Source of the DNA: Ophelia neglecta
Taxonomy: Eukaryota
Length of the DNA stretch: 64,000 nt
NCBI GenBank assembly: GCA_965285935.1
Contig: OZ260663.1
Span: forward strand, 97,960,001-98,024,000
Direction of reading: 5' to 3'
Shown: positions 1 to 56,476 of the stretch, piece after piece
How the letters are laid out: every line of letters begins with the position of its first letter
Numbering within the stretch: the first letter of the stretch is position 1
Made by a program: the position numbers and the translations under genes
Notes under the pieces: generated by a model
What the model was told of the DNA's origin: nothing
Database searches by the model: none
Seen by the model: only the letters and a program-made list of their open reading frames with translations

Positions 1-1424
1 GGCCCCCCATTGAACATGATGTGTTCAATGTCACCACGGTCAGACAATACTTCTTGGTGGATGGTGGATCTTGGTCTTCTATATACCATTGATAAAGTAT
101 TGGTGACCCGAGGTACTTCTTTTTTTTTCGCTAAAATGTTAAACCAAATTGAAGGTCAAAAATCACATTAATGTTTTCCTATATAGAGAAGGGTGAGTAA
201 TAAGAAATTCATAATGGCAAAAAAGGTAATTATACAACTATCGTACATTTAGAACAAAATAGATATACCGTCCTGGTTGGAAACTGAAGCCGACCAAGGG
301 GCAATAAGTACTGCTTGGCCGATGCAAAGGCTAACATGTCTGACCCGTTTTATACTGTGGTCACCTGTGATGATACCATGATCGGAAGATATGTAGTTTT
401 GGTGCAACATGCTTGGTCCCAGGCCGACCCACAATTGTGCCAGATCGTTGTTATTCCTACGACATCCATAGGTAAGTATTGAATCAAACTAATACCTATG
501 CTTGATAAGGCAATGTGAATTATTTAAAAAAAATATCCTCTGGTTTAACGAGCCGGGCTGGGTTTCGTAGACAGGATCCAAGCACCATGGTTGTAATGTA
601 AATTAGACTATTGGTCGAATAGCAACTTATGTTTATACAAGGTTCTAACTTTGTCGTAATAGGTTTCAATATTAATTAACAGTTCTTAGTGTTGAACTTA
701 ACCGTATCTACCATAATGCATTACCTCGAAATGTTTCGTTATACGCAATATTCAATAAAAGTATATATAGTGGCAAACAAGAAGTGTATTTTTAATATCA
801 TGTTTTGTTGTTTTGCGCTCAGGGGAAAGCAATGTCTTTAAAAGTAACACCATAGTTGTCTTGTGTGTCTCTGTGGTGGTGTTAACAGTAGCAGTCAGCA
901 GCGCCATATTTATCCTGATGTATGTTATTGATTTGTTGTATAACATTTTAATACGGCCCTACATAGACACTGTTATATAAGTTATATCCCACCCGTGTCT
1001 CATTTCATTTGGACCAGGTATAATTGCACTAACACAGATATATTGCTAGACACGGAAGCGATTACACTGTACAAATGGTCCTTTTTATGTTTCATTTAAA
1101 GCAGACGAAGAAGATTAGCCTCGAACATCAGGAATGCTGGACAGGAAGAAAGAGGCGGAGTGTCGCCTTTAAAACAAATGGAAGTGCGGATTCCACTTGC
1201 TGGTAGGACTTGGAATCCGAATTTGTCCTTTTGGTTATAATCAAATTATATCTTTTCTCTTTAACTATTTTCTTCTTCTTTGGGTGTGTACTAATTGTAA
1301 TGCAAACATTCATTATTTTATTCTGTATGTACCATGTACGTATATCATTGATGATCACGAGTAGACGATTAAGGTGCATTGCAACAGCGAATAATTATAT
1401 GGAAATATATAGCAGTGGAAATAA

Positions 1425-1823
1425 AATGAGGATATAACACAGGCAAACTCCAAAGTCCTTCGTGAATTAAAACAAGCCAGTAATGTAGAATCGGCTTGGG
1501 CGCGCAATGGAAAAGTTTTTGCTAAACAGAGTGGCAAAACCATTGTCGTGAAGCTCTCAAATGTTAAGCAAGTACTGGCTTACAATTCACCCTCGTCCTA
1601 CTCAGCTGCAGCATCTCGTGACAGTAGCGTGACTACACGTCAGATAAATGAGGAATCTTGTAATGGCGTAGCTAGACCCAAACTTACGGGACATGGAGTC
1701 AAACGTCCGCTCAACAAATCTCCGACCGACGACCAGACTAAACGTCCAAACAAACAGTCGACTCCGTCTAATCAGCCACAACTCGCCTCAGCCGCGAGTG
1801 ATCTGGAGATAAGCTTTGTCTGA
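1425..1823 (+). pseudogene. LINE ORF1 C-terminal remnant
   Basis: NEDITQANSKVLRELKQASNVESAWARNGKVFAK resembles the EDLT...AW..NGK motif of CR1/L2-type ORF1 proteins and is in frame with ORF 1548-1823. Confidence 0.65.
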
Positions 1824-2396
1824 TTGTCGATATCTGAACCCGGTACTCGCCACTTTGTGTTTCTATTGCATTAACGTTAGTCACATAGTTGTCTCACTTA
1901 TCCTGAATTAATATCAGCTTGCTTTTAGAAGGCTATGTATTTTTCGCTAGTTTATTATTTTGTATCATATTATGTTACATCGCTTGAAAAACTTTCAAGC
2001 TACTTAAAAGTTATATATGTTTCCGCACAACGATAACATTGTTACTCCGCTTCACTTGTCGCCCGAATGTTATTATGTTCTTCTACGTAATCTTTTCTTT
2101 ACTTCATAATAATTATTTAAGCATATCGCTTCCCCATCATCCATTATTCATTAGCAACTCTTTAAATTGTTACCAGGTAGTTGACAGCTATATTTGCTTG
2201 GCTACACCCAGGCTAGCATTGTGCATCCTTGAAAGCTTGCAGTTGATTTCCATCTTAGTAATTATGATTTGTGTTCACGTCTTAAAGAGATATGATCTGC
2301 ATTGCACAGTATCGTGTAGCTATTGGCTTATTTTGTTTGAGCTAATCAAAATTATTCAGTGATGCTCTATTTTGGTTTGTTATATTCCCAGCTTTC

Positions 2397-3135
2397 ATGC
2401 TTACGCTGTTTATCGCGCCTGATTTATTACTTCAATGTGGGGACATTGAAGCCAATCCCGGCCCTGCCCGTCTGTCTGGCCTCACCTTTTCTTATATGAA
2501 AGTGCGCAGTTTACTTGCAACCGCTGTTGCTAACGGTGCCCAAAGTCATGACAAACTAACTCATCTAGCCGCATTTTCGTCACATTATAGACATGACATC
2601 ATTGCTGTTTCAGAAACCTGGCTAAACCCCAGCACCCCTAGCTCCTCTATCACCCTGCCTGGTTACTTGTCACCTATCCGCAAGGATAGAGACGGACCCG
2701 GCGGCGGCTTGGCAGTTTATCTATCTGAATCCTTCCCAGGAAAACGACTTGAAATTACTGAATCAAGCTCAATATGTAATATATGTATAAGTGCAAAGAT
2801 AAAAAACTACACCATCCTCCTTTGTTTCTACTACAGACCTCCGTCAGAGGACTGTTTACACTTCCTCGACGGTATTAATGATATCATTGACGCTTCTTTT
2901 GAAAATCATAATATTGTAGCCTTTATTGGAGACACAAACGCTAAAAACAGCCTCTGGTGTCCTTCAGACACAACTAATTCCGACGGTCGTGTCACAAATG
3001 CTTTCTTTGTAACAACGAGGTTTTAGTCAGCTCGTCCACGAGGCGACCCGAGGCGACAGTCATAGCGAGGCCTGCCTTGACCACATATTTATCAATTCTT
3101 GTGACCATATTATATCATGCGGTACCCTACCGCGT
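2397..3135 (+). pseudogene. LINE ORF2 N-terminus: 2A-like peptide followed by an apurinic-like endonuclease domain (frameshifted near 3020)
   Basis: LLLQCGDIEANPGP, then endonuclease motifs SETWL, YRPP and GDTNAK. The reading frame continues in another frame to DHIF...CDHFPI. Confidence 0.88.
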
Positions 3136-4944
3136 TTGGTTGATAACTGCGACCATTTTCCAATTTATGCAGAAATGTTTCGCAACGTCAGTAAACATAG
3201 TGCTTTTAAACGTCAAGTGTGGGACTTTAAGAACGGTAATGTTGAACTCTACCGTGACTTGCTATATTCTGCCCCATGGGATATTGTTCTCTCGCTTCCT
3301 GATATTGACGACGTTACTGTAAATTTTACTAATGTATTATATCAAAATGCCGAACATAGCTTTCCCCACCGCTTAGTAACTATTAGACCAAGGGATAAGC
3401 CTTGGATGAATTCAACTATTAGACATGCCATGGTTGTTAGGGATCGTTTATTCAGATCAAAACATATTAGTAGTCAACACCTGAATGGCTATAAACAGGC
3501 GCGGAACAGCGCTACTGCCCTTATTCGTGAAGCTAAAACTAATTATGACAAATCTTCTGATGAGGTGGCACTTAGCAATAATATATCATCTCCAAACTGG
3601 AGGAGACTTATGAAAACAATCCTCAAGACACGTTCCCCTTGCTCTTCACCCGCCTTGCATATGGGCGATGACATAATTTGTGATCCTTCTGAAAAGGCCA
3701 ACCTATTTAATGACTTTTTTATTCAACAATCTACTGTCGAGGGGAATGATGACATCTTGCCCAACGATACTCACACTTTCCATGCTCAAGCCCCGTCTAT
3801 TGAGAATAAAGTAATTTCACCAGCTGAGGTATATAACGTTTTAAAATCACTTGACACTTCCAAAGCTACAGGGCCAGACCAAATCGGAAACTTTCTACTC
3901 CGGGAGGCTGCACTTCCCCTTTCTGAACCACTTGCCTTGCTGTTTAATGCATCCTTGGTTCAATGTAAGTTTCCCCAAGCTTGGAAACAAGCTGATGTTA
4001 TTCCTCTCCACAAGAAAGACAGTGTTCATCTTTGTAATAATGATCGGCCAATATCACTATTGCCCTGTTTATCCAAAGTTTTTGAGCGTCTTATATTCGA
4101 TCACTTGTTTAGACACTTGAAAAATTATAATGTTTTGGTGCCTAATCAGTCTGGTTTTATTCCTGGTGACTCTACTGTTAATCAGCTACTTGATATCTGT
4201 GATAAACTATTTTCTGCTTTAGACTCTGGAGATGAAGTCATAGGAGTTTTTATAGACTTCACTAAGGCTTTTGATAAAGTTTGGCATAGGGGTCTACTCT
4301 ATAAACTTGGCAGATCAGGGATTACTGGCGATATCTTGGCGTGGGTGGAGGACTATCTGACAGGCAGACGCCAGCGTGTGGTCCTTCCTGGTGGCGCCTC
4401 GTCCTTTAAATGTGTTCCTGCTGGTGTCCCACAAGGCTCTGTTCTGGGCCCACTACTATTTCTTGTATATATAAATGATATCATCCAGGGCATCTCCAGT
4501 TCTACTTACTTGTTTGCCGACGACACTTCAATTTTTAAGAGATTTTCTCTAGATAATTTACAAATTGCCATTGATTGTTTAAACCACGATCTTTCTTTAA
4601 TATACAGTTGGTGCAACAAGTGGAAATTATCAATCAGCGTTCCTAAAACACGAGTTGTTCTCTTTAGCAGGAAGCGCAGGCCTACGCCGCCTGCGCTTAA
4701 CTTATTTATAGGAAACTCACCAGTGGTTGGCGTGTCCTCTCACAAACACCTAGGTGTCATAATTTCTAATACTTTGTCTTGGGAGAGTCATATTTTATGT
4801 ATTACTGAGAAAGCTTCCCAACGTCTAAATGTTCTAAAATCTGTTAAGTATAAAATGTCTAGAAGGGGCCTCGATGCAGCTTACAAATCGTTTGTAAGAC
4901 CAATTCTTGAATATGGTCCATACTGTTTGATAGTCTCCCTTTAG
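3136..4944 (+). CDS. LINE ORF2 reverse transcriptase domain (part of a disrupted ORF2)
   Basis: 602-aa ORF with the full set of non-LTR RT motifs, including YLFADDT. Confidence 0.9.
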   Translation: MVDNCDHFPIYAEMFRNVSKHSAFKRQVWDFKNGNVELYRDLLYSAPWDIVLSLPDIDDVTVNFTNVLYQNAEHSFPHRLVTIRPRDKPWMNSTIRHAMVVRDRLFRSKHISSQHLNGYKQARNSATALIREAKTNYDKSSDEVALSNNISSPNWRRLMKTILKTRSPCSSPALHMGDDIICDPSEKANLFNDFFIQQSTVEGNDDILPNDTHTFHAQAPSIENKVISPAEVYNVLKSLDTSKATGPDQIGNFLLREAALPLSEPLALLFNASLVQCKFPQAWKQADVIPLHKKDSVHLCNNDRPISLLPCLSKVFERLIFDHLFRHLKNYNVLVPNQSGFIPGDSTVNQLLDICDKLFSALDSGDEVIGVFIDFTKAFDKVWHRGLLYKLGRSGITGDILAWVEDYLTGRRQRVVLPGGASSFKCVPAGVPQGSVLGPLLFLVYINDIIQGISSSTYLFADDTSIFKRFSLDNLQIAIDCLNHDLSLIYSWCNKWKLSISVPKTRVVLFSRKRRPTPPALNLFIGNSPVVGVSSHKHLGVIISNTLSWESHILCITEKASQRLNVLKSVKYKMSRRGLDAAYKSFVRPILEYGPYCLIVSL

Positions 4945-5675
4945 ATTTAACTAAAGCCCTTGAAAATCTAAATCTGGCCGCTGCACGCCTCGTATCTGGG
5001 GCCAGACGTGGCACTTCTCATGAACCTCTTTTGCAGGAAGTCGGATGGGAGTCACTTGCATCCCGCCGCAGAGTTGCTAGACTCGTTAAATTTTTCGATG
5101 TTTACACTAACGGCACTCCTCTCTATCTTAGCAACAATATTCCTTTGGTCACTCGCCATTCCTATGGCACCAGGAGACTTGCAGAAAACTGTATCCCTCC
5201 ACCCTTCTGTAGGACGGAACAGTATATATCCTCATATTTTCCCCAAACTATACGGGAATGGAACAGTCTTCCTCGTGAAACTCGACAAGCACGCAGCAAG
5301 ATTATATTTATATCCCTTCTGAAAAGCAAACCTGATAGGCCACCGAAATATTTTTCAATGGGCTCACGTAAGAGTCAAATTTTCTTAAGCCAGTGTCGTC
5401 TTGCTTGCAGTTGCTTGAATTTCCATCTTTACAACAATCACTGTGTTGTATCGCCACTTTGTCAATGTGGTTTAGAGGCTGAAACACCCCAACACTACTT
5501 CTTTTCTTGCGCAAATTACTCCACACATCGCGTTCATCTTGTTGATTTCCTATCAGAACAGTCTGTGCCTCCAGAGGACTACCTGTACACCGTTCTAAAT
5601 TGTGATATTTCTTATATTCTAACAGAGCTGGCTGGTCTAGTTAGTGAGTATATAGATAAAACCACTCGATTCTAA
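4945..5675 (+). pseudogene. LINE ORF2 C-terminal region (frameshifted continuation)
   Basis: EVGWESLASRR, SYFPQTIREWNSLP and a C-terminal Cys/His motif, typical of CR1-group ORF2 tails. Confidence 0.82.
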
Positions 5676-6800
5676 ATTTTGACCGACTTGGTTCAGTTAT
5701 TGATCCTACGTCATGTTTACTTTTGTTTGCTTTTGCCATTTGTGTCGGTCATCTATTTGTGTCCTGGTGCCTGTGTTCCGGCCGCTCCGTCACATCATGT
5801 CTCATGGTGTGGCGGTGCGGTGGGAGCCGGGCACCACCTATCATCCTGATTATTGGTCACTGATCATGTATGCATGTTTGTACTCCCTTACAACTTCTGT
5901 ATTATATAGCTAAACTACTTGCTACTCTGGATAACGTTCATAAATATTGTATGCAATTAAAATACGTTCCTATATGTATGGGTTTATATTTTAAGACATG
6001 TTTGAATGTATTTGCGTATGTACACACGGATGCTCAATATTGCAATATTCATCACTGTGTTGCTATGCCAACTACAACTACAATAATGTTTATCTAAAAC
6101 TCATCCAATCATCATCATCGTCATCATCATCATATTCGTCATCGCATGCCCGTATTTACTTGTTTATATGATTACTTTGGTAATTACACCCGATAAGCCA
6201 TTGGCTTTTTGTAAAAACCAAATTGTAAATAAATATGTTTAAACCAAAATGATATGTTTTTAACAGACCTGGTGAAAGGAACAATTCGGTATAATTCAAC
6301 AATACATCTCGCTTTCCCCCCGACACAGGTCCTGCGGTCGTAGAGACTGAAGCATCATCCGCAGGCGATTTCAATATCTATGAGAGCACATGTAAAACTG
6401 GCACAGAATACGGTATGTTTTGTTATTTACATATTAATTAGTGTATATATCACCCATGGTCATGATAGCAAACTTGTTTGGTAGCAATATTTGCAGTATA
6501 ACATAAATTATATATGATGTCACTATTTTCTGTACACTTTGCAGAAAATGTCAACCCTGAAAATCCTTATAAAGAGCTTAAAGGTGACAATAACACAACT
6601 CTACATGACTACAACGACTACATGGAAATATATATCTAACAATTCCAAGACAGTTATTTAGGAAATTGTTCATTGAACAAATGTCCAAGTACTATGATAA
6701 CATATGGATAACTTCATACGTTGCGAATCATTTGTTTGGTGTTGCATCGATCCTAGGCTGCGTTAGAGAGCTTAACAGTCCTTTCGATTTATTTTGTTGA

Positions 6801-8483
6801 ATGATATTTGTATATGAACGTTACAATAAATTCTACGATGGCCAATCGGGATTTAGGGCCGGTTTCTCAACAACAGACAACATCTTTATGTTGTATCAAT
6901 TGGTGAGAAAAACATTGTCGAGCGGAAATAAACTATTTGTATGCTTCTTGGATTTTCGCAAAGCGTTCGATAGCGTCATTCATCTTAATATGTGGTACAA
7001 GGTTGCCCGACTTGGGATAACGGGCAAATTGCTCGATCTGCTGAGGGACATGTATAGAGAAGTCAAGTCAGTTGTGAGGGGTTTCTCCGGGGAGTGTAGT
7101 GACCCTTTCGTATGTGTGACTGGAGTAAGGCAAGGGGAGTCTCTCTCGCCGTTTCTGTTTGGATGTCTAATCGAGGATTTTGATGAATATTTAAGACAAA
7201 AAACATCATTGTCAGGTACTGAATGGAACACTCTCAGCATAATGCTACTCGCGTACGCCGATGACTGTGCGGCCCTGGCCGGTTCAGAGGATGACATGCG
7301 GTCTATTCTCAGGGGCGTGGCCGAGTACTGTAGTCTCTGGGGGCTGTGTATTAATTATGAAAAAAGTGAAATTATGGTATTCACCAGATCATCTCGTTAT
7401 AGGGACTATTCTTTCAGCATGGATGGCCACAAAATTAAATGTGTGAAAAGTTTCAGTTTTCTAGGAATACGGTTCTTTTTAAATGGAGGCTGGAAGAGAA
7501 GTTTGGAAACGTTGGCTCGTCAGGGCGAGAAGGCAGTCTTCAAATTGTCCTGCCTTCAGAGGCGACTGTACCAAAATCCGGTGGATCGTGTGAAGGACTT
7601 TGAAACTCTGGTGCTCCCTATTCTGCTGTACGGGGCTGGCGCCTGGGGATGCCACACGAACTTGGAACCGGTTGAGCGCATCTATAATTCCTTCATGAAG
7701 TCTGTGCTCGGAGTTAAACGTTCAACTGCCGGATATATGTGGCAAATGGAGTTGGGTGTCCTCCCTTTCAGGGCACTGGCCATTCAAAGAGTTCTGTCTT
7801 TCTGGTCGGGTCTGGTTGACCCCAGCCGAACTCGACCAAGGTTAGCAGCTCTAGTTTACAGAGAAATGCTCAGTGAAGGTGATGACGCGTGGTGTGTCGC
7901 TGTACGTGACACTCTGTATGACTTGAATTTGCACAGTTACTGGAATAGTCAAGCTGTTTATAATAGACGATCTTTTATGAACAGGGTGAAGAACTGTTTG
8001 ATTGACTCGTATTCCCGGATAAATCGTCAGAAGTGCCTGGACTCCAGTAAATGCTATCTGTACAAGCATCTGATTACTCCACTGGAATATAAAAAGCCGG
8101 CTTGGTATTTACAAGCTGTCGACCAAAGAAATGTGAAGACAATTGCCCGTTTGAGGATGAGAACGCACAGATTAAATTGTGAAACAGGTGATTGGTATGA
8201 AGTGGACTGGGAACTAAGGAGGTGTACAACTTGTGATTTGATCGAAACCGAGGCGCATGTCTTGATGTCTTGTGTACGTTACTCACACATCCGCGAGAAG
8301 TATATTCCACGAGAGGTTAGAGCAATGGACCTAACCGAAAATGAAAAGCTCGTCTATCTATTACTGAGTGACAATCGTAAATGGTTGGATAATTTGGCTC
8401 TCGCTTTTTCATGGATAACAAAACTACATTCGGAGTATGCCGAATACTATGTGCCAATACCTTTAAATGACTTTGAAGATTAA
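6801..8483 (+). CDS. Reverse transcriptase plus C-terminal CCHC-like domain of a 5'-truncated RTE-X-like LINE
   Basis: Uninterrupted 560-aa ORF: QSGFRAGFSTTD, DFRKAFD, GVRQGESLSP, YADD, ELG, RRCTTCDLIETEAHVLMSC. Confidence 0.88.
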   Translation: MIFVYERYNKFYDGQSGFRAGFSTTDNIFMLYQLVRKTLSSGNKLFVCFLDFRKAFDSVIHLNMWYKVARLGITGKLLDLLRDMYREVKSVVRGFSGECSDPFVCVTGVRQGESLSPFLFGCLIEDFDEYLRQKTSLSGTEWNTLSIMLLAYADDCAALAGSEDDMRSILRGVAEYCSLWGLCINYEKSEIMVFTRSSRYRDYSFSMDGHKIKCVKSFSFLGIRFFLNGGWKRSLETLARQGEKAVFKLSCLQRRLYQNPVDRVKDFETLVLPILLYGAGAWGCHTNLEPVERIYNSFMKSVLGVKRSTAGYMWQMELGVLPFRALAIQRVLSFWSGLVDPSRTRPRLAALVYREMLSEGDDAWCVAVRDTLYDLNLHSYWNSQAVYNRRSFMNRVKNCLIDSYSRINRQKCLDSSKCYLYKHLITPLEYKKPAWYLQAVDQRNVKTIARLRMRTHRLNCETGDWYEVDWELRRCTTCDLIETEAHVLMSCVRYSHIREKYIPREVRAMDLTENEKLVYLLLSDNRKWLDNLALAFSWITKLHSEYAEYYVPIPLNDFED

Positions 8484-8640
8484 CTGTGACTTTTAACGAT
8501 TTCTGTGACAAAGAATGGTTATGAGTAATTTTGTTTTTCCTTGGATCACGCATGCATAATTTTTTCTATAATGTATATATTATTATTGCAGGTTATAAGC
8601 TTGTTGTATGGCTTGAAGACCTAATAAATACTACTACTAT
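6820..8640 (+). mobile_element. 5'-truncated non-LTR retrotransposon (RTE-X-like; clade assignment tentative)
   Basis: RT ORF begins mid-domain; 3' UTR ends in AATAAA followed by a (CTA)n tail at ~8623-8640. Confidence 0.85.
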
Positions 8641-10129: not shown

Positions 10130-10272
10130 ACACCCGCACACACACTCCCATACGCATAACAATACACAAAAAACCGCACGGAGGTATTTTTGAAAAAGAC
10201 ACACACACATACACACACACCCGCACACCCACTCACAAACACACTCACAAATACACTCACAAACACACTCCC
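10130..10272. repeat. Degenerate (CA)n / ACACACTCACAA microsatellite
   Basis: Visible CA-rich tandem repeats. Confidence 0.7.
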
Positions 10273-18100: not shown

Positions 18101-18114
18101 TTTTAATCTTACAG

Positions 18115-18477
18115 CCATCATGCGATTTGGGTCAGGCGACACCGTGGACAGAAATCCAGTGGAAGTCACAGCTTACTGTGTGACATGGCGCTGGAAGGAG
18201 GCGTTGAACGTATCAGAACATGCGACACCCCACGTAGGCTACCGGATTTATAACCGTCCATTGTACAGCAGTAACTGGAAGCTGGGAGTTGACATACCAT
18301 ACAGTAAGACCGAGTGGCAACAAGGGACGGTTAGCAATTTAAGTTCAAACACTGATTACGAGTTTGACCTGGAAGCGTATCGAAAGAAATCTGATGGAAC
18401 TAGGGTCTTGGGTGACACGTCCTACATCGAATCAGGTTATCCCACCTGGAACCTGCCACTTAGAAGTAAAACATTAG
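18115..18477 (+). CDS. Fibronectin type III-like exon of copy B
   Basis: VTW...GYRIY...W...TVSNLSSNTDYEFDLEAY pattern, with phase-1 splice sites on both sides. Confidence 0.75.
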
Positions 18478-33500: not shown

Positions 33501-33640
33501 CGCGATAATCCTAGTTCTTTTGGTAGCTTTACCCTTCAATAATGAAGTATGAACGAGAAATATACTGTACCTAGAACGGCGTCAGATGTCAAATACAGGC
33601 CAACAAGAGCGAGCAGAGAAGTGTGTATACCTTGAGCCAT
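30545..33640 (-). pseudogene. Copy C: truncated F-type lectin receptor (signal peptide, Cys-rich exon, FTLD, TM, partial cytoplasmic exon)
   Basis: Exons: 33571-33640 (MAQGIHTSLLALVGLYLTSDAVL); 32169-32312 (Cys-rich); 31538-31720 (FTLD part 1); ~31210-31394 (FTLD part 2, broken off before the last beta strand); 30782-30941 (stalk plus TM); ~30545-30645 (juxtamembrane, abutting the LINE). No PTP exons remain. Confidence 0.8.
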
Positions 33641-33653
33641 GTTCCCCTGGTTA

Positions 33654-44295: not shown

Positions 44296-44476
44296 GGGGG
44301 GGGGGGGAGAGGGGGGGGGGGCGTGTTTGGCAAAAAGTATAAGGTCTGCTTTGAGTGTGTGAGACTTCGGAAAGTATTGGTCAATATAGTAAATATATAT
44401 ATATATATATGTATATATGTGTGTGTGTGTATAGTATATACATATATATGTATATTTATATATACATATATATACG
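44296..44476. repeat. Poly-G and (TA)n/(TG)n microsatellites
   Basis: Directly visible. Confidence 0.8.
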
Positions 44477-46149
44477 TGTTGAAAAAAATATTCAATTGAT
44501 CGCCAGCGACCACTTTATTTCCCAGTAAGAAAAGTGCTCGATCAAAATGACATAACTATGTGAAATAATATCTTGAATACTAGTTATAAGCCCAAGTCGC
44601 TTCCCTGACCCTGTAAAGGTACATCGTGGCCAGCACATTTCATAATAAATAACGTTTAGACTTAGTTACGGGTAGAGGCACTCACTTAGTTTCCGTGTCG
44701 ATGTGATACCGAAATAATCAATGAAATTGTATAAAATAAATCATGATGCTACAACGAATGATCTGACACAAGTACATTATACTTATAGATGTCGTACAAA
44801 TCAGAATATATTAGAGAATTCTTACCGAAACCATCAAAAAATATCCCACAAACAACCAAACCAAACAGCAGGGTGTGAATTACGGAGGCCATGTTTCTCT
44901 GCGTTGAACTTTTCGACTGAATGTCGTTTGCCGATAATACGTTGTCCAATCATTGTATCCAATTCATCGTTTTTTTTGACGTAGTACAGAGAGATAAGCT
45001 TGATATATGTAAAAGACTAGGCACGGGAAGTGTGCTGTGTAATGCTAAACTTCCTAATAACCGGGTACACAAACATGATTAGTTTAACTTACTGTGCGCT
45101 CAATGCTGTTCACATATTGCCACAGTTTGTGCGGTCGGCTTATAAAACTCTCTGGGTCACATCAATTCAATGCAGTTTTGACTATATGATTGGTTTATAA
45201 ATTAATGTTCCGACCTGAAGGGGAGGTCCTACGCGTGTTTCTTTACTTGACTTAAAAGTAGGATGTCTTCTTGGTACTTCTAATAATATAAGATTATGGT
45301 GCTTATGTGGCGTTAAACCCCGAAATCCCAAAATCCAATTCTCATAGTATAAGAGTTATGAATACAGACCACTTATCAGGTGATTATTTCTGTAAATGTA
45401 CAGGTAATATTTGGCGCGGTGTTTCCGATGACGCATGGTTAAAAAGTGATTCTCGAAGGAAACCACTTACGAACGCACTCACGATCATTTCCGAATATAT
45501 GTCCGACACGCCATAGTTCTAAGCCAGCTTTACCGACTACACATAATGACATATTGCTATTTGATCCAACAGTAGAGATAAGCTCGAATGAAATGCTGCT
45601 TTTTCAACGCAATGCGTGATCGCCGATCTCTTCTCATTTTCATTTATGTTATTACAGGGCTCGATTACTATACGTGTATGTACTATGTGACATGAGAAGT
45701 AATTTGCAGCCCCAAGATAATTTTTATTTTCGCCGATTGAAAAATATGAAGACTTTGTTACACTCATGCAAAATACTACTATAAAGATAGTTTACGATGT
45801 TTTGAAGCTTATAAAACACCACATATATTGCCAATAAGAAATAAACAGATAAATATCACTTCTATTACTAACAAGGTATAAACAGAAATTCTCCAAAGTA
45901 ATATTTTAAGAAATCAGTTGCTACACACTCTCTAAATATATACGTTCAGGTGTCGAGTGTGGTTAAGTCAATCACTTTCCACCTTCGCAAAATATCGTGT
46001 ATCCGAATATTATTAAACACAGGATCCACCAAAGGACTTTCCATTGCTATGTTTCGACTGGAATACAGAAAGTCCAATTTGAGTGGCATGATGCGTGAGT
46101 TGTCCTCTATTATATCCTTGATAAATATGAGAAATAATATGGGGACGAT

Positions 46150-47736: not shown

Positions 47737-50700
47737 TTAAGATTCAGTTGATGATAGATTGACTCCATACGTGGAAACATATTCTCTTGCAACCTCATGG
47801 AGGAATTGGTACTGAACCTATCAATAAAAAGTCTTTACTTAAGTATGTTTTCTTTTTTTCTAATAAAAGTATTCTTATACCATTCTGGAGTCGGAGGCAA
47901 CCCGATACCCTTGCTACCAAAACCACAGCTTCAAACGCTTTCCTTTCAATAAGGTGTTGCTTTTCGTAACGCACATAACAAAGGGTTTCATACTAACCAC
48001 GCTGTTGACGAATTGGGGCCGACTGTTGGAGACACATCTGGCGGCCATGAAAACGTCTATTTCATTGTCTGCTTTCATCTTTTTTACCACATAACTTGCT
48101 GCACAATATACGCCTGAACGTGCTGCCCCGTCCCTGAAAGCAAGCATCCATCAAAATGATTTGCAAGTGTTCAATACATACGAGAAAGCAAACGTTCTTA
48201 ATTTATGTGATTTAAAGATGTGTTTTTCACTTAATGAAAACAATATTTAGATTCAGACGTCAACAGAAACAAAACTGTTTTTTATATTACAAATGTGAAA
48301 AATGAAAATCACACATAAAGCTTACAGGCAATGCACAAGAAGGGGGTCGTCCTTCGTCGAGCGATGCACGTTATCAATTAGATCTAGCAATGATCCAATG
48401 TTTGGAGGTTCATTAGTATTTGGCCAATCCAACAAATGGAGTTGTTTAACCATCAATGGTTCTTCTACTCTCTGAAGAATCAGATGAAACACGCGTGTCA
48501 AAATTATAAAAATAAAAACAGAACAATGCAGTAATCAAGTCCCCATATATTATGGTTATTATGAAGATTATTACCGCCTTGGTCTTGGTGACTAGGAACT
48601 CTCGGGTCTGTATAGAGCCACTGTTATCAGATGATAAGAACTGGACCTCTAGGTGTCCATACATATGCGTTGGTTCCTCATCATTTGGCCAATACAATTT
48701 ACACTGCTGAAATGTCATGTGTTGACAAATAATGTTAACAAATAATGTTCACATTATTATCTAACCTGGAATAGTGTCATTATAATTAAATGAAAAATTT
48801 AGTGATTCAATGAGGTATTTAGGGGAATTTACTCTGTAATTTGGAGTTTTCTTTCCTTAAGTTTAAGAACTGGGGATTGATATTTTTCTGGCCCTATAGA
48901 TGACAGAATTAAAAGATAATTCCTGATCAATGCATTTCAACTGTCTGTCGGGTATCCATTCCTGTTTTGTACCTCATCATATACATCAAGGGGATTTAGC
49001 ATGATGATTGTTGCCCGTCTATATTCATAAACAAGTCTCCAGAAATCATCGACTGTGCTTGGAAGTGGCATCTGTGTGACTATTGTGCCGCGTTCATCTA
49101 GGTAATTCTGCAGTTTAGTAAAACAATTAATATAATAAATATACAGATCCATGAAAAGTTTAGATATTGTTGTGACTTGCATTTTACAAAATCCAGAATT
49201 TTGATTACTATAATTATAAGTTTTCCAATGAAAAGTAGTTTGGTGAAACCTACATCCACGAACACAGCGTTTATATAAATGCTGTCATCCTCTCCCGATG
49301 GCATAAGGGTAGGTCTTACTCTGTCATCTTTGAAAAGTAAATCATACTATAATCTGCATTTCTCTGGCAGTCGATAATCGTCAACGAAAGATATGAATAC
49401 GAGCAAAAAGCGAAATTACCAGGAATAATAGCATTACTCCTGTTTTTATCCACATTAATTTCGTTTCTTCCTTCAGCGCCTTCGACACGCCTTCCTGGTT
49501 TTAATACTTGTAACATCTGTTCGAACATACAAAACATGTACTTTCGAATAATAACAAATACATTTAGATCTATATAAACCAAACTGCTAAACTAACAATG
49601 CTTTTTAATCTTACAGGAAAGAAAAAAATTAAATAAACGTGTGATTTAGAGATATTATTTTACATTGAACTGATTATGTATTTTGACCGATCCTGTTTCG
49701 TCCGGGGTGGTCAGTTCAGTTAGTCGATGTTGTATCTCACTAAGAGATATTGCTGTGACGCCAATTGTATAAGCCTCCAACATGGCAGTGTGCACAAACC
49801 TATACTGGTCCTATAAAAAAATCAAATAGATCTCAATGAGGCATATACGCACGCATATCAATTATCTTTTAATTAAAAATAACGATAAACAAGCCTAAAT
49901 AAACGTGGATAAACATAATTAATAAGCAATCTGGAAAAGATTATGTATATACATAAAACTAAATACATTGATTGTACCAGTGTTTGAACCATGTTCATTC
50001 GTTCTTTTCTCATCTGATTGACAATGCCAAGGACGTCAATCTGCGACTCAGCCCCGGCCTGCTTTAACAAGTAGTCCAGAGCAATAAACGTCCCCGTGCG
50101 ACCTATTCCAGCGCTGGTAAAACATGGACACGTATCTTAAAATGTTATATATATATATATATATGACACCGGTTTTTATTACTCTTGTATTGAAACAATT
50201 ATTTTAATACCTGCAGTGCACTACCATGGGGCCATTGCTGTCGTTGTCCAAGGACCTAACCTTTCTCCTGAAGGAGAGCATAGGGTAGGCGTGTTCCGGG
50301 GCCGACTTGTCAGGCCATCGAAGGAACTGGAGATGTCGCACTGTTCTTATTTCATCCTAAACATATATAGCTAATTGGTTAAACTTACAACTGTCTACCT
50401 AATATATAGTTAAGAAGATTTCTTAAAACTTGAATATTTTAGGACATTGACATCTAATTGATGGTTGGAATTAAGAATGAAAGTTGTTAGTTATAATATA
50501 ATATCCACTGAAATGTAAGGTGGAACGACATGATTATTTTCTATTACGTTCCTCTTTTATATAACCTACCCCTTTGGTGATATTAAGCAGGCTAAACGCG
50601 AAATCAGTGAATAGGTTTCGTTTCATTGTTTTGACCTTGTAATCCCCAAATGTTAGTTCTTCTCCAGTATTTTCTGACCAGTATTGTTGACACTTTCTCT

Positions 50701-53700
50701 AAATTATCGTAAATGACATTTGATCGATTGACAATATATCAACTCCAATCGCATTAGTAAACAAGAATCTTATAGCAGTGTGTTTTCATTGCATAAATAT
50801 ATTGTATGATACCCTGCAATTTTCCAGTGTTTTTGTAAGCATGACTATCCTACTGGACTTGAGCTGCCAGATCATTTTCCAAAACTCGTCTGTCGTGTGT
50901 TGCGTTGGTGCTTAATGAAAAGATGAATAATTAATTTCGTATTTTTACATGTACCGAGTATGCGTATAATTAAAAACACCAATTGTAACCAGGTCAACTG
51001 TAACACAGATGTAACGCAATTCTTAAACTGTTTCCGATGATAAAGAACAGGTAGAAACACACAAAACGTACCTTGAGCAGCAACATAGGTGTTTTTTTGC
51101 CCGTTATATCCCTAGAAACAAGAAAACAAACCAATTGTTAGAAATACTTCATTCAACATGTCTTTATTGGTGTTAGAATATAACTTGCATACTCACAGTG
51201 ATGTAGTTTGCATTGATGTAGTCAGACTCAGATTCAGCATTATTAACTTCGAGAAAAACTCGCGTGGAATCATCTGAAACAGAACGATTCTACTGCAACA
51301 GATACACTAGTTTAAAATAGGAATCATTACGGTTCGTTTTGCAAGCAACAAAGTGGTACACGGCCAAACGCACAAGCAATTAACTAGCCAGGCAGAATAC
51401 ACTAGACGGTGAATATCAACCTACAAGCTTTAATGTTCAAAAACCTATTCCTGAGGTTGTTCTGTGGAAGGTTTGCTGCGATGCAGTAGTCCGATATGTC
51501 ATGACACGGTATCCCCTGAAAATAGCCAAAAGTAACAACACGTGAACGACGAGAGGTCGTTCAGTCTATTGAGTGCGGTTTCACTTTAAAGAGTATGAAC
51601 CAGAGCTATAGCCGTACTGCTGGGACTAAATGTTTCCTCAATAAAAAGCTTATTTCCTGAAAATATCTTCATTATGAGTGATTCAAATGTACTATAATTA
51701 CTTTATGACACACCCATTTCTAGACCGTGTTCTTAACTTAATTCTAAAAGACGGCGGAATCAACGTACATTGAATTCAAGCTTGAATCCATCATCTATAT
51801 CCATCCTTGTAATGTGGGCTTTCAGGTAGTCAAGCTTGATTGTGTATCCTCGAATGCCATCATTTTGGCCACCATTAACATAAAGTGCTTCGCTAATTTC
51901 CGGTTCCGACGGTTTTCGTTGGCCTACACTTATAGCGCTGCCAAACATTTCCTTATTGAACGCAATGGATGTGCGGTATTCCGAGGGACTGTTTGGTAAT
52001 TCATTCTCTGCTAGAAAAATTACAGTGAACCAAACATAGAACAATAAATTTTGCATTATATTTATCTAATGCGGTGGTTGTTTGTATATTGGATAGGTAT
52101 GATCATAGTTTGAAATTGCCACTTTGAGAAATGAAGATTCCTAACTTTACCAGAAATAAGATTCCGCTGTACCACTTGTCCTGACGGCGTCGTTAGTGCC
52201 AGATCATTATTCACAACATTCCTATTCCTCAAGGCTAACTTTCGCCGTTTCCTTTAATATAAATACAAAATGAGCCTTTTGATATCATTTGCGTGTACAT
52301 TTCGGTAAGGCTGCATACCATTGGTTTAGAACTATATATGATTATACCGATACTTGCGCAATGGTTTCGAAACCCAAAGGATGCCGATACTTAGGATAAA
52401 AAGTAGCAGTAATTCAATAAAAAGGCTGATTACACTTTTGAATAAGACAATGCGATACTGACACCTATGCAAGTGGAACAGTCTGCAGATACCAATATTT
52501 CCCATAAAAAAATTGAGAAGATAATAACAAAACTGTTCCTGTTAAGTCCTAAATGTGTTTTCATTTTCCAAATTGCAACAATTGGGTTTAAACAGGAAAT
52601 TCTGTCTTAGCCAGGACGTAGTGTGACCATGAATCCCACGCACCAATCCCCCCCCCAATCCCCCCCCCACACGCACACATACATCTCCCATCCCACACAC
52701 AATGAAACCTGCCTTAAAGACCACCTCTATATTCAGACCACATGGTAACTCACTAGCATTTTCAAGATAATGTAACCTGTCTTAACAGACCACCTTTATA
52801 GTAAGACCATTATTTTCCAGTCCCTTGGGTGGTCTCACTTCACAGGTTTCATCGTACTCGGCTACATATCAAACGAGGGCTTACACAATTTAACGGCTCA
52901 TCCCAGAAAGCCTGATGAACTGAACTAGCAACATGACTGATACTCAACAACAGAATTTTTTTTTGTAAATATACACCACTTTCTATGAACTAGATTCAGC
53001 CCTTTTGTATCCCGACCGCATCGAAATATTCAACCCAAACGATACCGATATTGACATAACTCAACTATTGATACGATACTGGTAGTATGGGATATAGGTA
53101 TGCAGCCCTATATATCAATGTTAGAGGAGTATGTCTATGCGTGCTATACATGAAGAGACTATAGGGATGTTACTTTGAAAGTGTCTAAATGCAACCTGCA
53201 ATTAGTAACATACGTCAGGGTAGATATGGCGATGTTGACTGCTACTACTAAGGATAACAGCACCACAGAGACACATATCATAGCTATGGTGTTTACATTG
53301 ACATCTCCAGCTTTAGGGCCTTTGCTTTCATCAGGGTAATCTAAAACAAAAAATTATATTTGACTTAAAAGTTTCGTTTTTCAGTGTATATTTAATTATA
53401 TTCAACTGTATAAATATTATATACAATGAAATGGTTCCTGGGGCATGTTGTTAAAAGATTCCTGACCTTAGCTAAAATATTTGATTTGGACTTGACTTTT
53501 TTTGACTTGAGTAGTCTTCTTTCCGAGTTAAGTCAAAGTCTTAAGGCTAAGACAGCTATATGGCAGGCTTGAGAAAAGCCCAAGTCTAAGTCTAAAATCA
53601 GGCTTACCTGAAAAAGAATCTTTTAACAACCTACTTAAATCTAGGTCAATTGATTTAAAGACACATTTCAAGGCTAAGTCTAAAACTATAGAAGCAAAGT

Positions 53701-56456
53701 TCAAGTCCAAAGCTAAGAAACTTTTATCAACTGACATATGGTCATCCACAATCGCGCCAAATATGAAGGTATTTTTGTTAATACTGAGTTACGGTTGTAT
53801 CCAACTGTAAGAATATATTCACCTCAAAGTGCCAATGAAAAATTAGAAGTTTCCAACGTTGTCTCTGTCTATATATATACATAGTTTGTGCATGTAACCC
53901 AATATCGGTAGGTTCTACTCACCGTTACAATCCGGGAGCTCGTATTCTGTCGGGCATTGACTACATCGCTGGTAATCATCACAGGTGACGTTCGAGGGGC
54001 AGTCAGAACAATCTTAACAGTAAAGAGATTAATTGAGCGAGAGTTTTTTTTACTTTAATGCAGATTGCTGTATCAAGCATATATATCCGTTAGACAACTC
54101 ATATTTGGTTCGTTTACCTACCTTTGGATTTGCTACCAAGAACAACCATCTGGCAAAGGCTGGTCTTTGACCCTTGGTGTGGCTTAAGTACTACATATCT
54201 TCCAATTAGGTTACTTTCACAGATCACCTCAGTAAATCGGGGGTTAGAGTTGATAGCCTTTGCACCAGCCTGGCAGTAACTACCTTCCGGTTGGGATGAG
54301 TTTCCAACCAGGATAGTATATCTCTTTTGTCCAACAACTGTATAAGAGTAGGACTTATGTAGTTTTATTTTATAATCATTTATAATTCCTGATGATTTAC
54401 CCTTTTACATCAGTAAATAGATTAAATCGCTATTTGGCCTTATATTTGTTGCATCATATTAAATGGAAAGCCGAAAAAACATATATTAGTACCACCGATC
54501 AGCAATACTTTATCAATGAGATACAGATGCCCAAGATCCACCATCCTCCAGGCAGTATTGTCTGAAGGTTGTGATACATAACACATTGTGTCCGACGGGA
54601 CGCCATCGATTGTCTGCTCCGTCGCGGCGCGAGCTGAAGCACTCTGTGTCGACCAGTTGCCCAACATTACATTGTCTGGATCAGATCAGAAAGTACACAG
54701 CGTGTTATTTTCGGGCGAATAGTTGTTAACTTTATGCTCTAAAGATTACCGGATAATTGTATTTAGTGATGCTGAGTTAATAAATTCAGCTATCATCAAG
54801 CCATTCGCTCAGTCTTATAACGCCTAACGTCTTTGCTAAACTTGTTTTCTGATATTTGGGAGTTGCCCTGGCTGCCACAAGTTTAATAACAAGTTTATTT
54901 ACTGCGTGGGAGCTGGAGATTGATTTATTGATGTGTGTGGGCTGTGGCTGCTATTTCCTGATGATTTCGGACCTACCTAATTAACCATCCCTGACTAATG
55001 ATTTTGCTTTGTCTGTCGGGAATCCACTTACGGCCTTTTGTTTGCTTTTGTGCTATTGGACATTCGATGTACTTGTTTTATCCAATTAAAGAACAGTTTC
55101 ACTTTCATAAGAAGTGCCCGAATATCGTTCCTTATATTTTTTACATTCACCTTGAAGGTTCCTTAAGAGAAATAATGCTATCTTAATTGGTAAACACACA
55201 TTTATGGATACAAACTATGCCGGAAATGCAGATCTTACCAATTGGGCATTTCTGGTCAATCCATGGTTCAGAACCACCTGGGCTCCTATCCTCACAGCCT
55301 ACCCCAGTATGACATTCCCGATTGTTTGCTTCGCAGCGACATTGGAATGCATACAGCATACGGTCTACCACATCTCGACATAAACCTGAGAAAAGGATGT
55401 GGGAATAATACGTTTGCCAAAACACTCGCAGATTGAAAAGAAACAGGTTGCACTGATCCAAATTAACATCACCTGCTTGCGTTTCTTGCTTGCTTTTTCA
55501 GGGTGATATTTTCATATTAATAGTATATCTAAAAACATCAACATTTTATCAATTTAATGGTTTTAAAGTACAATTAGCACATTTTCTGACACACACTGTA
55601 TATTCTGACTAGATGTAGATTGTACGTTTACATATAGAGGCGGGTTTAGTTTACTCAACCATATTTAATTACATTTACAGTAGTCAAGATAGAACGTATA
55701 GGTTAAACACGTTCAAAGATGAATACAATGACAGTATGTCACTTAATCATTTAGTAATTATACGTAGTTACTCATGTGCAATGGCTGTCAGCAAACATGC
55801 AGGCCGCATAACATGATAAATAAGCTATTACAATTCGACAAAAAAATTGGGGGACATGGATTATGGATAATCATAAAATCCGGATACTCGGAATCCGGAT
55901 AATCGGGCCTGTACTCTATTATGAAGTGAATCGCTAGTCAGCCAGTTATTTCCAGATAAGGAAAACCCTAGAGTATCGAGGCATACAGTAGGGAAGTTTA
56001 TGTCACTCGTCCCGGACGTACTGGGTCATGCTGCACAATGCTCAATCGAAAATATGTGGCTAGGTATCTTTCATATTTAGAAATATTGCTAAAGAACCAA
56101 AAAAACTTAACACAAACTTAACACAAACTTAATTTGATTGAATATTATATATGACATGACAGATTATGAATAAACCCCGACATGGTACTTGAGTGCGTGA
56201 AGTATACCGGGTTTATGTCATTACTCAATTACAGGAAAATACATTCAAATAACTTCACTTCCTTTTCAACTGAATCATATTATCGCTCTTCCAATGGGGC
56301 CTATCATATAAATATATTAGCTGACAATCTTACTTATTTTGGTAGCTTATCCCTCAATAATATATAAATCGGAAATAATACTGTACCTTGAACACCAGCA
56401 GAGGTCATATACAGGGTCACTAGAGCGAGCAGAGAAGTGTGTATTACTGCAGTCAT
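47737..56456 (-). CDS. Copy E: apparently intact F-type lectin/EGF receptor-type protein tyrosine phosphatase (SP-Cys-rich-FTLD-EGF-TM-PTP D1-PTP D2), about 23 exons
   Basis: Exons: 56387-56456 (MTAVIHTSLLALVTLYMTSAGVQ, signal peptide); 55239-55385; 54493-54675 and 54122-54337 (FTLD); 53923-54012 (EGF-like); 53214-53340 (TM); 52151-52251; ~51769-52011; ~51424-51514 (RNRFLNIKA); 51197-51273 (DYINANY); 51072-51111; 50813-50910; 50570-50698; 50211-50356 (WPDK..VHC); 49977-50113 (SAGIGRTG, MVQT); 49664-49810; 49420-49516; 49254-49327; 48972-49107; 48575-48706; 48326-48472; 47998-48133 (DGAARSG); 47737-47817 (stop). Phases are consistent and no stops were seen. Confidence 0.88.
52698..52856. mobile_element. 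Tc1/mariner(pogo)-type MITE in an intron of copy E
   Basis: Imperfect TIRs ACAATGAAACCTG ... CAGGTTTCATCGT, with internal GACCAC repeats. Confidence 0.6.
53440..53640. mobile_element. Palindromic MITE-like element
   Basis: Inverted repeat GTTGTTAAAAGATTC (~53447-53461) / GAATCTTTTAACAAC (~53616-53630), enclosing GACTT/AAGTC arrays. Confidence 0.55.
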
Positions 56457-56469
56457 GTTCTCCTGGTTA

Positions 56470-56476
56470 TGACTCA
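56470..56476 (-). promoter_or_regulatory. AP-1 consensus (TGAGTCA) 13 nt upstream of the copy E ATG
   Basis: Exact consensus, conserved at the same position in copy C. Confidence 0.3.

What the first reader, a model, noticed from the sequence alone, without database searches (positions are those of the whole stretch)
1..56476. Tandem cluster of five F-type-lectin receptor paralogs with interchangeable signalling tails: a candidate invertebrate paired immune-receptor system
Seen in sequence: five paralogs share the same two-exon FTLD and intron phases but differ inside the cell. D and E have tandem PTP domains with intact catalytic motifs, B has a crippled PTP, A has a Tyr-motif tail with no PTP, and C is truncated. 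Three of five carry disabling lesions and the ectodomains are much more divergent than the PTP domains. Established: classical RPTP ectodomains use Ig/FN3/MAM/carbonic-anhydrase-like modules; F-type lectins are innate recognition proteins; vertebrate paired receptors (SIGLEC, KIR, LILR) couple similar ectodomains to opposing tails and evolve by birth-and-death. Inference: this is a fast-evolving recognition-receptor locus in which the phosphatase is built into the receptor and has a phosphotyrosine-scaffold counterpart. Related EGF/lectin-PTP genes may already be auto-annotated in mollusc genomes; the paired organisation is the part likely to be undescribed.
Basis: partly seen in the sequence, partly recalled or inferred. 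Interest (0 to 1): 0.85.

Follow-up and report, generated by a model that had tools for sequence, protein, structure and literature searches.

The report
Lectin-headed phosphatase and tyrosine-tail receptors
This window is one 55-kb repeat unit of a very large invertebrate gene family: five single-pass receptors with an F-type-lectin-like head, three wired to a built-in tandem tyrosine phosphatase and two to a short tyrosine-motif tail; only two phosphatase genes are intact here, and an immune 'paired receptor' role is unproven.

Summary
Five paralogs share a two-exon F-type-lectin-like domain (FTLD) with phase 1-1-1 introns.

- **D and E:** complete ORFs of 844 and 946 aa, with signal peptide, FTLD, TM and tandem PTP domains. 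D1 has intact WPD, HCSAGIGR and Q-loop motifs.
- **B:** dead, with a P-loop Arg>Cys, a stop codon in D2 and a GT>GC donor.
- **A:** a tyrosine-tail gene (YENV, PYxEL, YMEI) with a TGA in the FTLD and a LINE in an intron.
- **C:** new here. It is not a truncated phosphatase gene but a dead tyrosine-tail gene.

A sister copy of the whole unit lies 225 kb away and carries all five genes intact. The family has at least 128 FTLD exons on this chromosome.

Tails do not follow ectodomain ancestry. C-type (tail) and E-type (PTP) share a 5' gene half (74% FTLD identity, dS 0.13-0.35), while their TM and cytoplasmic parts are unrelated.

The 'paired immune receptor' reading is only partly supported:
- No near-identical ectodomain twins exist.
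- The fucose-binding histidine is absent in all five copies.
- No excess of amino-acid change in the FTLD was detected (omega 0.3-0.6, like the PTP domains).
- No RNA data exist.

The scan has already flagged this family in other windows of this genome.

The parts
1..112 (+). Gene A (tyrosine-tail type): 3' part of FTLD exon 1. The gene starts before the window (signal-peptide exon at L002 7216-7285, Cys-rich exon at L002 9353-9490).
253..471 (+). Gene A FTLD exon 2, with an in-frame TGA at 285-287 (VGN*SRP; five paralogous copies read VGNSSRP).
823..919 (+). Gene A transmembrane exon (78.7% DNA identity to the TM exon of E).
1105..1202 (+). Gene A juxtamembrane exon (basic stop-transfer stretch RRRRLAS...).
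1430..6245 (+). LINE insertion (endonuclease + reverse transcriptase ORFs) inside an intron of A. It is absent from the sister unit.
6329..6412 (+). Gene A tail exon 1 (NIYEST; ends TEY, which joins the next exon to give YENV).
6545..6639 (+). Gene A tail exon 2 (ENVNPENPYKEL ... YMEI, stop codon at 6637-6639). This is a cassette exon with 21 copies in the cluster.
6817..8640 (+). Second LINE fragment (reverse transcriptase ORF 6801-8483) just behind A. It is absent from the sister unit.
16161..26392 (+). Gene B, 25 exons: SP, Cys-rich, FTLD (16763-16972, 17320-17544), Cys-rich, EGF-like, FN3 (18136-18435), stalk/TM (18656-18876), D1, D2. It is a recently killed copy. One junction (juxtamembrane, around 19029/22357) is unresolved.
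24143..24145 (+). Gene B D1 P-loop codon: Cys in place of the catalytic-loop Arg (HCSAGIGCTG). The sister copy has Arg.
25554..25556 (+). Gene B in-frame stop codon in a D2 exon (PIQTY*DIE). There is no stop in the sister copy.
23011..23012 (+). Gene B donor site GC instead of GT after the DYINANYIT exon. The sister copy has GT.
30490..33640 (-). Gene C remnant (tyrosine-tail type, E-like head). It keeps SP (~33571-33640), Cys-rich (~32169-32315), FTLD exon 1 (31538-31720), FTLD exon 2 cut at 31212 by a ~550-bp deletion, the TM exon (30780-30881) and tail exon 1 cut at 30490. Tail exon 2 is lost.
28027..30489 (+). LINE insertion that replaces the 3' end of gene C. The sister unit has 492 bp with the tail exons here.
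35576..44892 (-). Gene D, 21 exons, intact 844-aa ORF: SP, FTLD (42565-42756, 42145-42360), TM (41100-41211), D1, D2.
47737..56456 (-). Gene E, 23 exons, intact 946-aa ORF: SP, Cys-rich, FTLD (54493-54675, 54122-54337), Cys-rich (53923-54012), TM (53214-53340), D1, D2.
49978..50356 (-). Gene E D1 catalytic exons: WPD loop and VHC (50211-50356), then SAGIGRTG to QTL (49978-50113). The intron splits the HCX5R motif.

Best explanation
**What is there (shown).** The window holds one ~55-kb unit of a segmentally duplicated, lineage-specific receptor family. Each unit encodes single-pass membrane proteins with one F-type-lectin-like domain outside, in two signalling formats.
- Format 1 (B, D, E types): a classical receptor tyrosine phosphatase, with a D1 that looks catalytically competent and a D2 that lacks the general-acid Asp.
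- Format 2 (A, C types): a ~100-residue tail with three conserved tyrosines (YES/YET, YENV, PYxxL).

The genes are built from phase-compatible exon blocks, and blocks have been exchanged. The head of the C-type tail receptor and the head of the E-type phosphatase are recent relatives, while their inner parts are unrelated. In this copy of the unit only D and E are intact. A, B and C were inactivated after the last block duplication by a nonsense codon, by a nonsense codon plus an active-site change, and by a deletion plus a LINE.

**How it probably works (inferred).** The head binds an unknown ligand, probably not fucose in the canonical way. Binding clusters or relocates the receptor. Tail forms become tyrosine-phosphorylated and recruit SH2 proteins (Grb2-type at YxN, Src-type at YEEL/YxxL). 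Phosphatase forms bring a PTP to the same sites and oppose that signal.
For: **Gene models and motifs:**

**FTLD homology**
- The exon-1 profile finds 1653 proteins. All eight of the hits scanned with Pfam are PF22633 proteins.
- It hits solved F-type lectins: 3le0 at 7.8e-8, 3cqo and 1k12 at 1.1e-5, 2j1r at 3.7e-5.
- Exon-2 profile hits lie directly after exon-1 hits in 43 of 44 cases.

**PTP homology**
- PF00102 is covered collinearly in D1 and D2.
- The closest solved chains are PTPsigma/LAR and PTPepsilon/alpha.

**Duplicated unit**
- The window 1-58237 is collinear with C5:98184766-98233768 at 88-98% identity.
- B', D' and E' there are intact, with equal exon lengths and AG/GT kept.
- A' and C' are intact.

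**Family size and subfamilies:**

**Mosaic ancestry**
- FTLD identity matrix: {A,C,E} 55-74%, {B,D} 44-48%.
- C'-E dS is 0.13-0.35, against saturated dS among the PTP domains.

**Purifying selection on intact copies:** omega 0.3-0.6 in both FTLD and PTP.
Against: - No transcript evidence: the only public runs are DNA-like contigs that cover introns and show no splice joints. That FTLD and PTP exons form one mRNA therefore rests on phase compatibility, conserved ORFs and co-duplication.
- Per-exon Pfam scores for the FTLD are below the gathering cut-off (13.7-19.6 vs 27.8 bits). The exon-2 profile finds no solved structure.
- The fucose-binding His is absent, so lectin activity is doubtful.
- WPD is followed by K rather than H, and activity is untested.
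- SH2 recruitment is read from motifs only.
Confidence: 0.6

Rival explanations
1. This is a strict paired immune-receptor system. Activating (tyrosine-tail) and inhibitory (phosphatase) receptors see the same, fast-changing, pathogen-related ligands on immune cells, as KIR, LILR and Siglec pairs do.
For: - C-type and E-type share a recently related head on opposite tails.
- Both formats are duplicated together in every unit.
- The tail has an ITAM-like YxxL...YxxI and YENV.
- Copies are gained and lost.
- Amino-acid variation in the E-type FTLD is concentrated in one stretch at the start of exon 2.
Against: - No opposite-tail pair has a near-identical head. The best is 74%, and the A-type has nothing above ~52%.
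- Omega of the FTLD is below 1 and not different from the PTP domains (Fisher p 0.45-0.52; p 0.08-0.12).
- The sugar-binding His is absent.
- No expression data of any kind exist.
- No charged TM residue or ITIM, which are typical of vertebrate pairs.
Confidence: 0.2
2. The receptors serve non-immune cell recognition, such as gamete, self/non-self (allorecognition), larval settlement or neural adhesion signalling. F-type lectin repeats do this in oyster sperm bindin (from my own knowledge), and RPTPs do it in axon guidance.
For: - The closest PTP relatives are LAR/PTPsigma, which are adhesion-type RPTPs.
- The FTLD has lost the canonical sugar triad, which fits protein or other ligands.
- There are very many tandem copies with moderate omega.
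Against: Nothing here speaks for a particular tissue. There is no RNA. No Ig/FN3 adhesion arrays occur except one FN3 in B.
Confidence: 0.15
3. This is mostly neutral amplification. The array is a by-product of segmental duplication of one or two functional ancestral genes, and many copies, including this window's, are redundant or decaying with no specific role.
For: - Three of five genes here are dead.
- Further broken copies: L005 (donor GT>AT), L017, L022 and L029.
- Omega of 0.3-0.6 is relaxed for a phosphatase.
- LINEs accumulate in the unit.
Against: - Nine of ten E-type copies and all five genes of the sister unit keep full ORFs and every splice site.
- Omega is clearly below 1 in both domains.
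- Subfamilies that split long ago (dS saturated) all retain catalytic motifs.
Confidence: 0.1

Closest known systems
Classical tandem-domain receptor protein tyrosine phosphatases (LAR/PTPsigma type R2A; PTPalpha/epsilon type R4)
   Same: - Single-pass receptor with a membrane-proximal D1 carrying WPD, HCX5R and Q-loop motifs.
- D2 lacks the WPD Asp.
- These are the best matches among solved chains.
- PF00102 is covered twice.
   Different: - The ectodomain is one F-type-lectin-like domain, with or without small Cys-rich/EGF/FN3 modules, instead of Ig/FN3/MAM/carbonic-anhydrase modules.
- The family is amplified to at least 128 FTLD exon-2 matches in the one search that listed the whole family, all on this chromosome.
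- WPDK replaces WPDH.
- An intron splits the HC|SAG motif.
F-type lectins (eel agglutinin 1K12, striped-bass FBP32 3CQO, Streptococcus FTLDs 3LE0/2J1R; Pfam PF22633)
   Same: - The N-terminal half aligns with E 8e-8 to 4e-5, with the NxAxGKxAxQS, DG and WWxVDL blocks.
- The C-terminal half maps to the second half of PF22633 domains.
   Different: - The His of the His/Arg/Arg fucose triad is absent in all five copies.
- The Arg positions are kept only in part (A-type).
- The NRxDC(C) block is missing.
- The domain is membrane-anchored and fused to signalling tails rather than secreted.
Vertebrate paired receptors (KIR, LILR, Siglec, PILR; defined in PMC3533184 as very similar extracellular regions with opposite signalling)
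   Same: - Related heads sit on different signalling tails.
- The genes are clustered and show gain and loss of copies.
- Tail exchange is by recombination in an intron.
   Different: - Heads are only 57-74% identical.
- The 'inhibitory' arm would be a covalently attached PTP rather than an ITIM that recruits SHP-1/2.
- The 'activating' arm carries its own tyrosine motifs rather than a charged TM residue pairing with an ITAM adaptor.
- Neither a shared ligand nor immune expression has been shown.

Membership tests
F-type lectin domain (PF22633 / FTP) | Significant sequence match to the family profile | tested here: inconclusive
   - Single exons score 13.7-19.6 bits against PF22633, below the cut-off of 27.8.
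- The reverse test is significant: the exon-1 profile hits solved FTLDs at 7.8e-8 to 3.7e-5. Eight hits from its top 150 in 1.84 billion proteins were scanned with Pfam, and all eight carry PF22633.
- Exon-2 hits follow exon-1 hits in 43/44 cases.
- The joined two-exon domain was not sent to Pfam.
F-type lectin domain (PF22633 / FTP) | His/Arg/Arg fucose-binding triad (H-x24-R-x-D-x4-R/K motif; motif recalled from my own knowledge) | tested here: not met
   - None of the five copies has a His in the 10 residues before the WW/WR/LW motif, the stretch in which the solved FTLD 3le0 has its His.
- The NRxDC block is replaced by YSEKG (B), YSLKG (D) and LIG (C, E).
- Only the A-type keeps two Arg (VTREQNRY).
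F-type lectin domain (PF22633 / FTP) | Jelly-roll fold of the F-lectin type | not tested
   The domain is split by an intron.
Classical receptor PTP (PF00102, class I Cys-based) | PTP domain with the HCX5R P-loop, the WPD general acid and the Q-loop | tested here: met
   - D and E D1: WPD, VHCSAGIGR(S/T)G, QTLxQYxF.
- PF00102 positions 14-221 are covered exon by exon.
- B fails: Arg>Cys and a stop in D2.
- D2 has CX5R but no WPD Asp.
Classical receptor PTP (PF00102, class I Cys-based) | Signal peptide, ectodomain and one TM helix in the same polypeptide as the PTP domains | tested here: inconclusive
   Continuous, phase-compatible ORFs with hydrophobic SP and TM stretches are found in D and E and kept in nine of ten E-type paralogous copies. 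No RNA confirms the joins.
Classical receptor PTP (PF00102, class I Cys-based) | Phosphotyrosine phosphatase activity | not testable with these tools
   This needs an enzyme assay.
Paired receptors (PMC3533184) | Very similar extracellular regions on members with opposite signalling | tested here: not met
   The best opposite-tail pair, C'-E, is 74% identical in the FTLD; A-E is 57%. The A-type exon 2 has six copies at 92-100% and nothing else above 52%.
Paired receptors (PMC3533184) | Opposite (activating vs inhibitory) signalling | not testable with these tools
   Only motifs are available: YENV, PYxxL and YMEI against a built-in PTP.
Paired receptors (PMC3533184) | Clustered genes evolving by duplication, exchange and loss | tested here: met
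   - The five-gene unit is duplicated as a block.
- Subfamilies have 3-10 recent copies.
- Lesions are copy-specific.
- C-type and E-type share a 5' block.

The most novel reading that the evidence does not exclude
An invertebrate lineage has built a paired-receptor logic from different parts. One lectin-like head lineage is repeatedly re-wired, by recombination in the intron behind the head, between a covalently attached tandem phosphatase and a phosphotyrosine-docking tail. The two formats, kept side by side in every repeat unit, act antagonistically on the same ligands.
Probability: 0.25. Interest if true: 0.8.

Novelty: new variant of a known kind. Interest (0 to 1): 0.55.

Why it matters
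Receptor tyrosine phosphatases are among the least understood receptors, because few ligands are known and their ectodomain repertoire is thought to be narrow.

This family joins a lectin-type head either to a PTP or to an SH2-docking tail, in at least 128 copies on one chromosome. It would offer a natural series of head and tail swaps for asking how ligand binding controls a PTP.

It would also show that opposing-tail receptor families can arise outside vertebrates from unrelated building blocks. I found no paper that describes an F-lectin-headed RPTP in the searchable library.

For this particular window the value is mainly anatomical. It defines the five-gene repeat unit, shows which copies are dead and how they died, and shows where heads and tails were exchanged.

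Tried and rejected
**Pfam on the long ORFs.** They are LINE reverse transcriptase and endonuclease, not receptor parts.

**Motif scan for HCX5R in single frames.** It found nothing, because an intron splits the motif.

- It returned multi-repeat F-lectin proteins. None of the 150 listed has a PTP domain like the window's, and none is closer than 44-45% to the window's exon.
- Close relatives of this family are therefore either absent from that library or ranked below the repeat proteins. This does not show that the architecture is unannotated elsewhere.

**Exon-2 profile against solved structures.** No hit.

**An intronless 882-aa tandem-PTP ORF elsewhere in the genome (L001) as a mapping guide.** Too distant to map the exons.

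**RNA evidence.**
- No RNA run was found.
- The three runs found are DNA-like: their contigs run through introns and show no splice joints.

**Test for faster or adaptive evolution of the head.**
- Old paralogs have saturated dS.
- Window versus sister gives omega 0.5-0.9 for the FTLD against 0.24-0.56 for the PTP domains, Fisher p 0.08-0.12.
- Nine E-type and five D-type copies give omega 0.59 vs 0.42 and 0.31 vs 0.40, p 0.52 and 0.45.
- Positive selection on the whole domain is therefore not supported.

**Literature.** Six searches found no F-lectin/PTP receptor paper.

- The joined (spliced) proteins were used only in my own scripts for identity and dN/dS. They were not sent to Pfam, structure prediction or database searches.
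- Cross-species comparison was not possible: the genome collection holds only this genome plus bacteria and archaea.
- The organism was not identified here.

Full report
**What the window is.** It is C5:97960001-98024000 of a 762-Mb eukaryotic assembly. Other agents' notes call the animal a lophotrochozoan, probably an annelid; I did not verify this. The long bacterial-style ORFs are LINE reverse transcriptase and endonuclease. The receptor genes are split into many short exons.

**How the genes were found.**
- An all-against-all comparison of stop-free translated segments recovered exon families. Two families have five members (the two lectin-domain exons). About fifteen have three or six members (the PTP D1 and D2 exons).
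- This places five genes: A (+, starting before the window), B (+), C (-), D (-) and E (-).

**Gene models.** I chose splice sites by frame compatibility and consensus.
- E is a 23-exon, 946-aa ORF.
- D is a 21-exon, 844-aa ORF.
- Both have canonical AG/GT throughout and the same intron phases.
- Both lectin exons are flanked by phase-1 introns in all five genes.
- E reads SP, Cys-rich, FTLD, Cys-rich, TM, juxtamembrane, D1, D2. D is the minimal form: SP, FTLD, TM, D1, D2.
- B adds EGF-like and FN3 modules (fn3 at 2.4e-4, below Pfam's cut-off). One juxtamembrane junction of B is unresolved.

**The phosphatase part.**
- Exon by exon, E covers PF00102 positions 14-221 in D1 and 40-221 in D2.
- The nearest solved chains are PTPsigma/LAR and PTPepsilon/alpha.
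- D1 of D and E has KNRF, DYINANY, WPD, VHC|SAGIGR(S/T)G and the Q-loop.
- D2 keeps CX5R but has WPN or WPT in place of WPD, as many D2 domains do.

**The head.**
- Single exons reach only 13.7-19.6 bits against PF22633 or PF00754.
- A profile of the five exon-1 peptides finds 1653 proteins in 1.84 billion. Eight of the top hits were scanned with Pfam, and all eight carry PF22633.
- The same profile hits the solved F-type lectins 3le0, 3cqo, 1k12 and 2j1r at 7.8e-8 to 3.7e-5.
- The exon-2 profile finds no solved structure. Within the 150 retrieved proteins, 43 of its 44 significant hits lie directly behind an exon-1 hit, with a median gap of 15 residues. The two exons are therefore the two halves of one F-lectin-type domain.
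- The canonical fucose-binding His is absent in all five copies, and the NRxDC block is gone. Homology to the fold is good, but canonical fucose binding is unlikely.
- The fold itself is untested.

**The tyrosine-tail genes.**
- A continues from the TM exon (823-919) and a basic juxtamembrane exon (1105-1202), across a LINE, to two tail exons (6329-6412, 6545-6639).
- The exon junction creates YENV. It is followed by NPENPYKEL and YMEI, with NIYEST upstream.
- The last tail exon has five further copies at 83-95% identity.
- Three fetched paralogs show the same eight-exon gene within about 4 kb and without the LINE.
- A itself has TGA where the five other copies read Ser, so this copy is dead.

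**The sister unit.**
- Searches with each FTLD exon 2 show that each gene type is a subfamily with recent copies: A six (92-100%), E ten (87-100%), D ten (89-100%), B three (95-100%).
- At least 128 FTLD exons lie on this chromosome. PF00102 matches number 249 or more genome-wide.
- The order A(+), B(+), third(-), D(-), E(-) recurs 225 kb away.
- That region is collinear with window 1-58237 at 88-98% DNA identity. It lacks the three LINE insertions at 1430-6245, 6817-8640 and 28027-30489.
- E', D' and B' there have every exon at the same length, all AG/GT, and no stops. B' has P-loop Arg, no D2 stop and a GT donor.
- The lesions of B (Arg>Cys, stop at 25554-25556, GC donor) therefore arose after the block duplication. 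WLD in place of WPD is shared by both B copies.

**What C is.**
- The sister's third gene is SP, Cys-rich, FTLD, TM and a tyrosine tail (HFYETI, TSY|ENV, NPEHPYEGL).
- The window's C keeps SP, the Cys-rich exon, FTLD exon 1, the TM exon and the start of tail exon 1.
- It has a ~550-bp deletion at the end of FTLD exon 2. It has also lost the rest of the tail, where the LINE sits.
- C is therefore a dead tail receptor, not a truncated phosphatase.
- The tail cassette exon has 21 copies, all in the 96.6-98.8 Mb cluster: six A-type, nine C-type and six others.

**Exchange of heads and tails.**
- FTLD identities form two clades: {A,C,E} at 55-74% and {B,D} at 44-48%, with 31-38% between them. D1 of B, D and E is 61-66% identical, with saturated synonymous sites.
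- C-type and E-type share a DNA block from upstream of the signal-peptide exon to about 66 bp past the FTLD exon-2 donor, introns included, at 74-80% identity. dS is only 0.13-0.35.
- Behind that point the two gene types are unrelated. One head lineage thus sits on both tail formats, through recombination in the intron behind the head.
- A and E also share a TM exon at 78.7% DNA identity, more than their FTLDs at 67%.

**Selection.**
- Old paralogs: FTLD 33-44% identical against D1 61-66% and D2 50-58%. The head is indeed more divergent.
- Window versus sister: omega for FTLD 0.90, 0.60 and 0.50 (E, D, B), against 0.24-0.56 for the PTP domains. Counts are small (Fisher p 0.08-0.12).
- Nine E-type and five D-type copies, summed along a minimum spanning tree: omega 0.59 vs 0.42 (p 0.52) and 0.31 vs 0.40 (p 0.45).
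- Both parts are under moderate purifying selection. No domain-wide positive selection is seen.
- E-type amino-acid variation clusters at the start of exon 2, which deserves a site test.

**Gene loss.**
- Dead copies: A, B and C here; L005 (donor GT>AT); L017, L022 and L029.
- Nine of ten E-type copies are intact.

**Expression.** No RNA run holds the sequence. The three runs found are one sample's DNA-like contigs, which cover introns and show no splice joints. Expression, tissue and the joins are untested.

**Comparison and verdict.**
- The genes work like classical tandem RPTPs with an unusual, lectin-derived head and with PTP-less siblings.
- They resemble paired receptors in layout. They fail the defining test of very similar heads (PMC3533184).
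- I found no published description.
- The scan has already reported this family from other windows of this genome. This report adds the repeat unit, the nature of C, the copy-specific lesions, the recombination point and the negative selection tests.

Noticed in passing
window 1430-6245, 6817-8640, 28027-30489: Three LINE insertions (RVT_1 and Exo_endo_phos ORFs, partly intact) are present in this copy of the unit and absent from the sister copy 225 kb away. They are therefore younger than the block duplication (dS about 0.03-0.08).
   Followed up: partly
window 58981-60253 and 60296-60907: Two 23-bp minisatellite arrays (54 and 28 copies, ~77% matches) lie in a G+C-richer, strongly strand-skewed stretch just beyond the end of the duplicated unit (collinearity with the sister ends at 58237).
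   Followed up: no
window 51880-51900 (E) and ~22460 (B), juxtamembrane exons: The phosphatase-bearing receptors B and E also carry an ALYVN motif (a YxN, Grb2-type site) between the TM and D1. D lacks it. The PTP forms may themselves be docking sites.
   Followed up: no
window 52701-52900: Public DNA contigs pile up to a summed depth of about 1e5 on a 200-bp stretch in an intron of E, with many alternative joints. This is a very highly repeated short element.
   Followed up: no
L001 1858-4506 (-) = G000:C2:95958857-95961505: An intronless 882-aa open frame encodes FN3-like and Thr-rich stalk regions, a TM and tandem PTP domains (PF00102 match at 1.2e-68 without stops). It looks like a retrocopy-like or single-exon RPTP gene.
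   Followed up: no
G000:C2:96.40-96.67 Mb: A separate tandem array of PTP exons, many with a single in-frame TGA inside the matched stretch (PF00102 positions ~129-208) in many copies. This could be a shared lesion, a shared intron or recoding.
   Followed up: no
L005 ~2990-3000 (A-type copy at C5:98367659): This otherwise intact A-type paralog has AT instead of GT at the donor of FTLD exon 1, so it is another probable pseudogene in the tail subfamily.
   Followed up: partly
window 51634-52281: The public contigs that lie here differ from the window at 2-3% of positions (17 of 648). This is about as far as the sister copy E', so they may come from a paralog or another haplotype or individual.
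   Followed up: no
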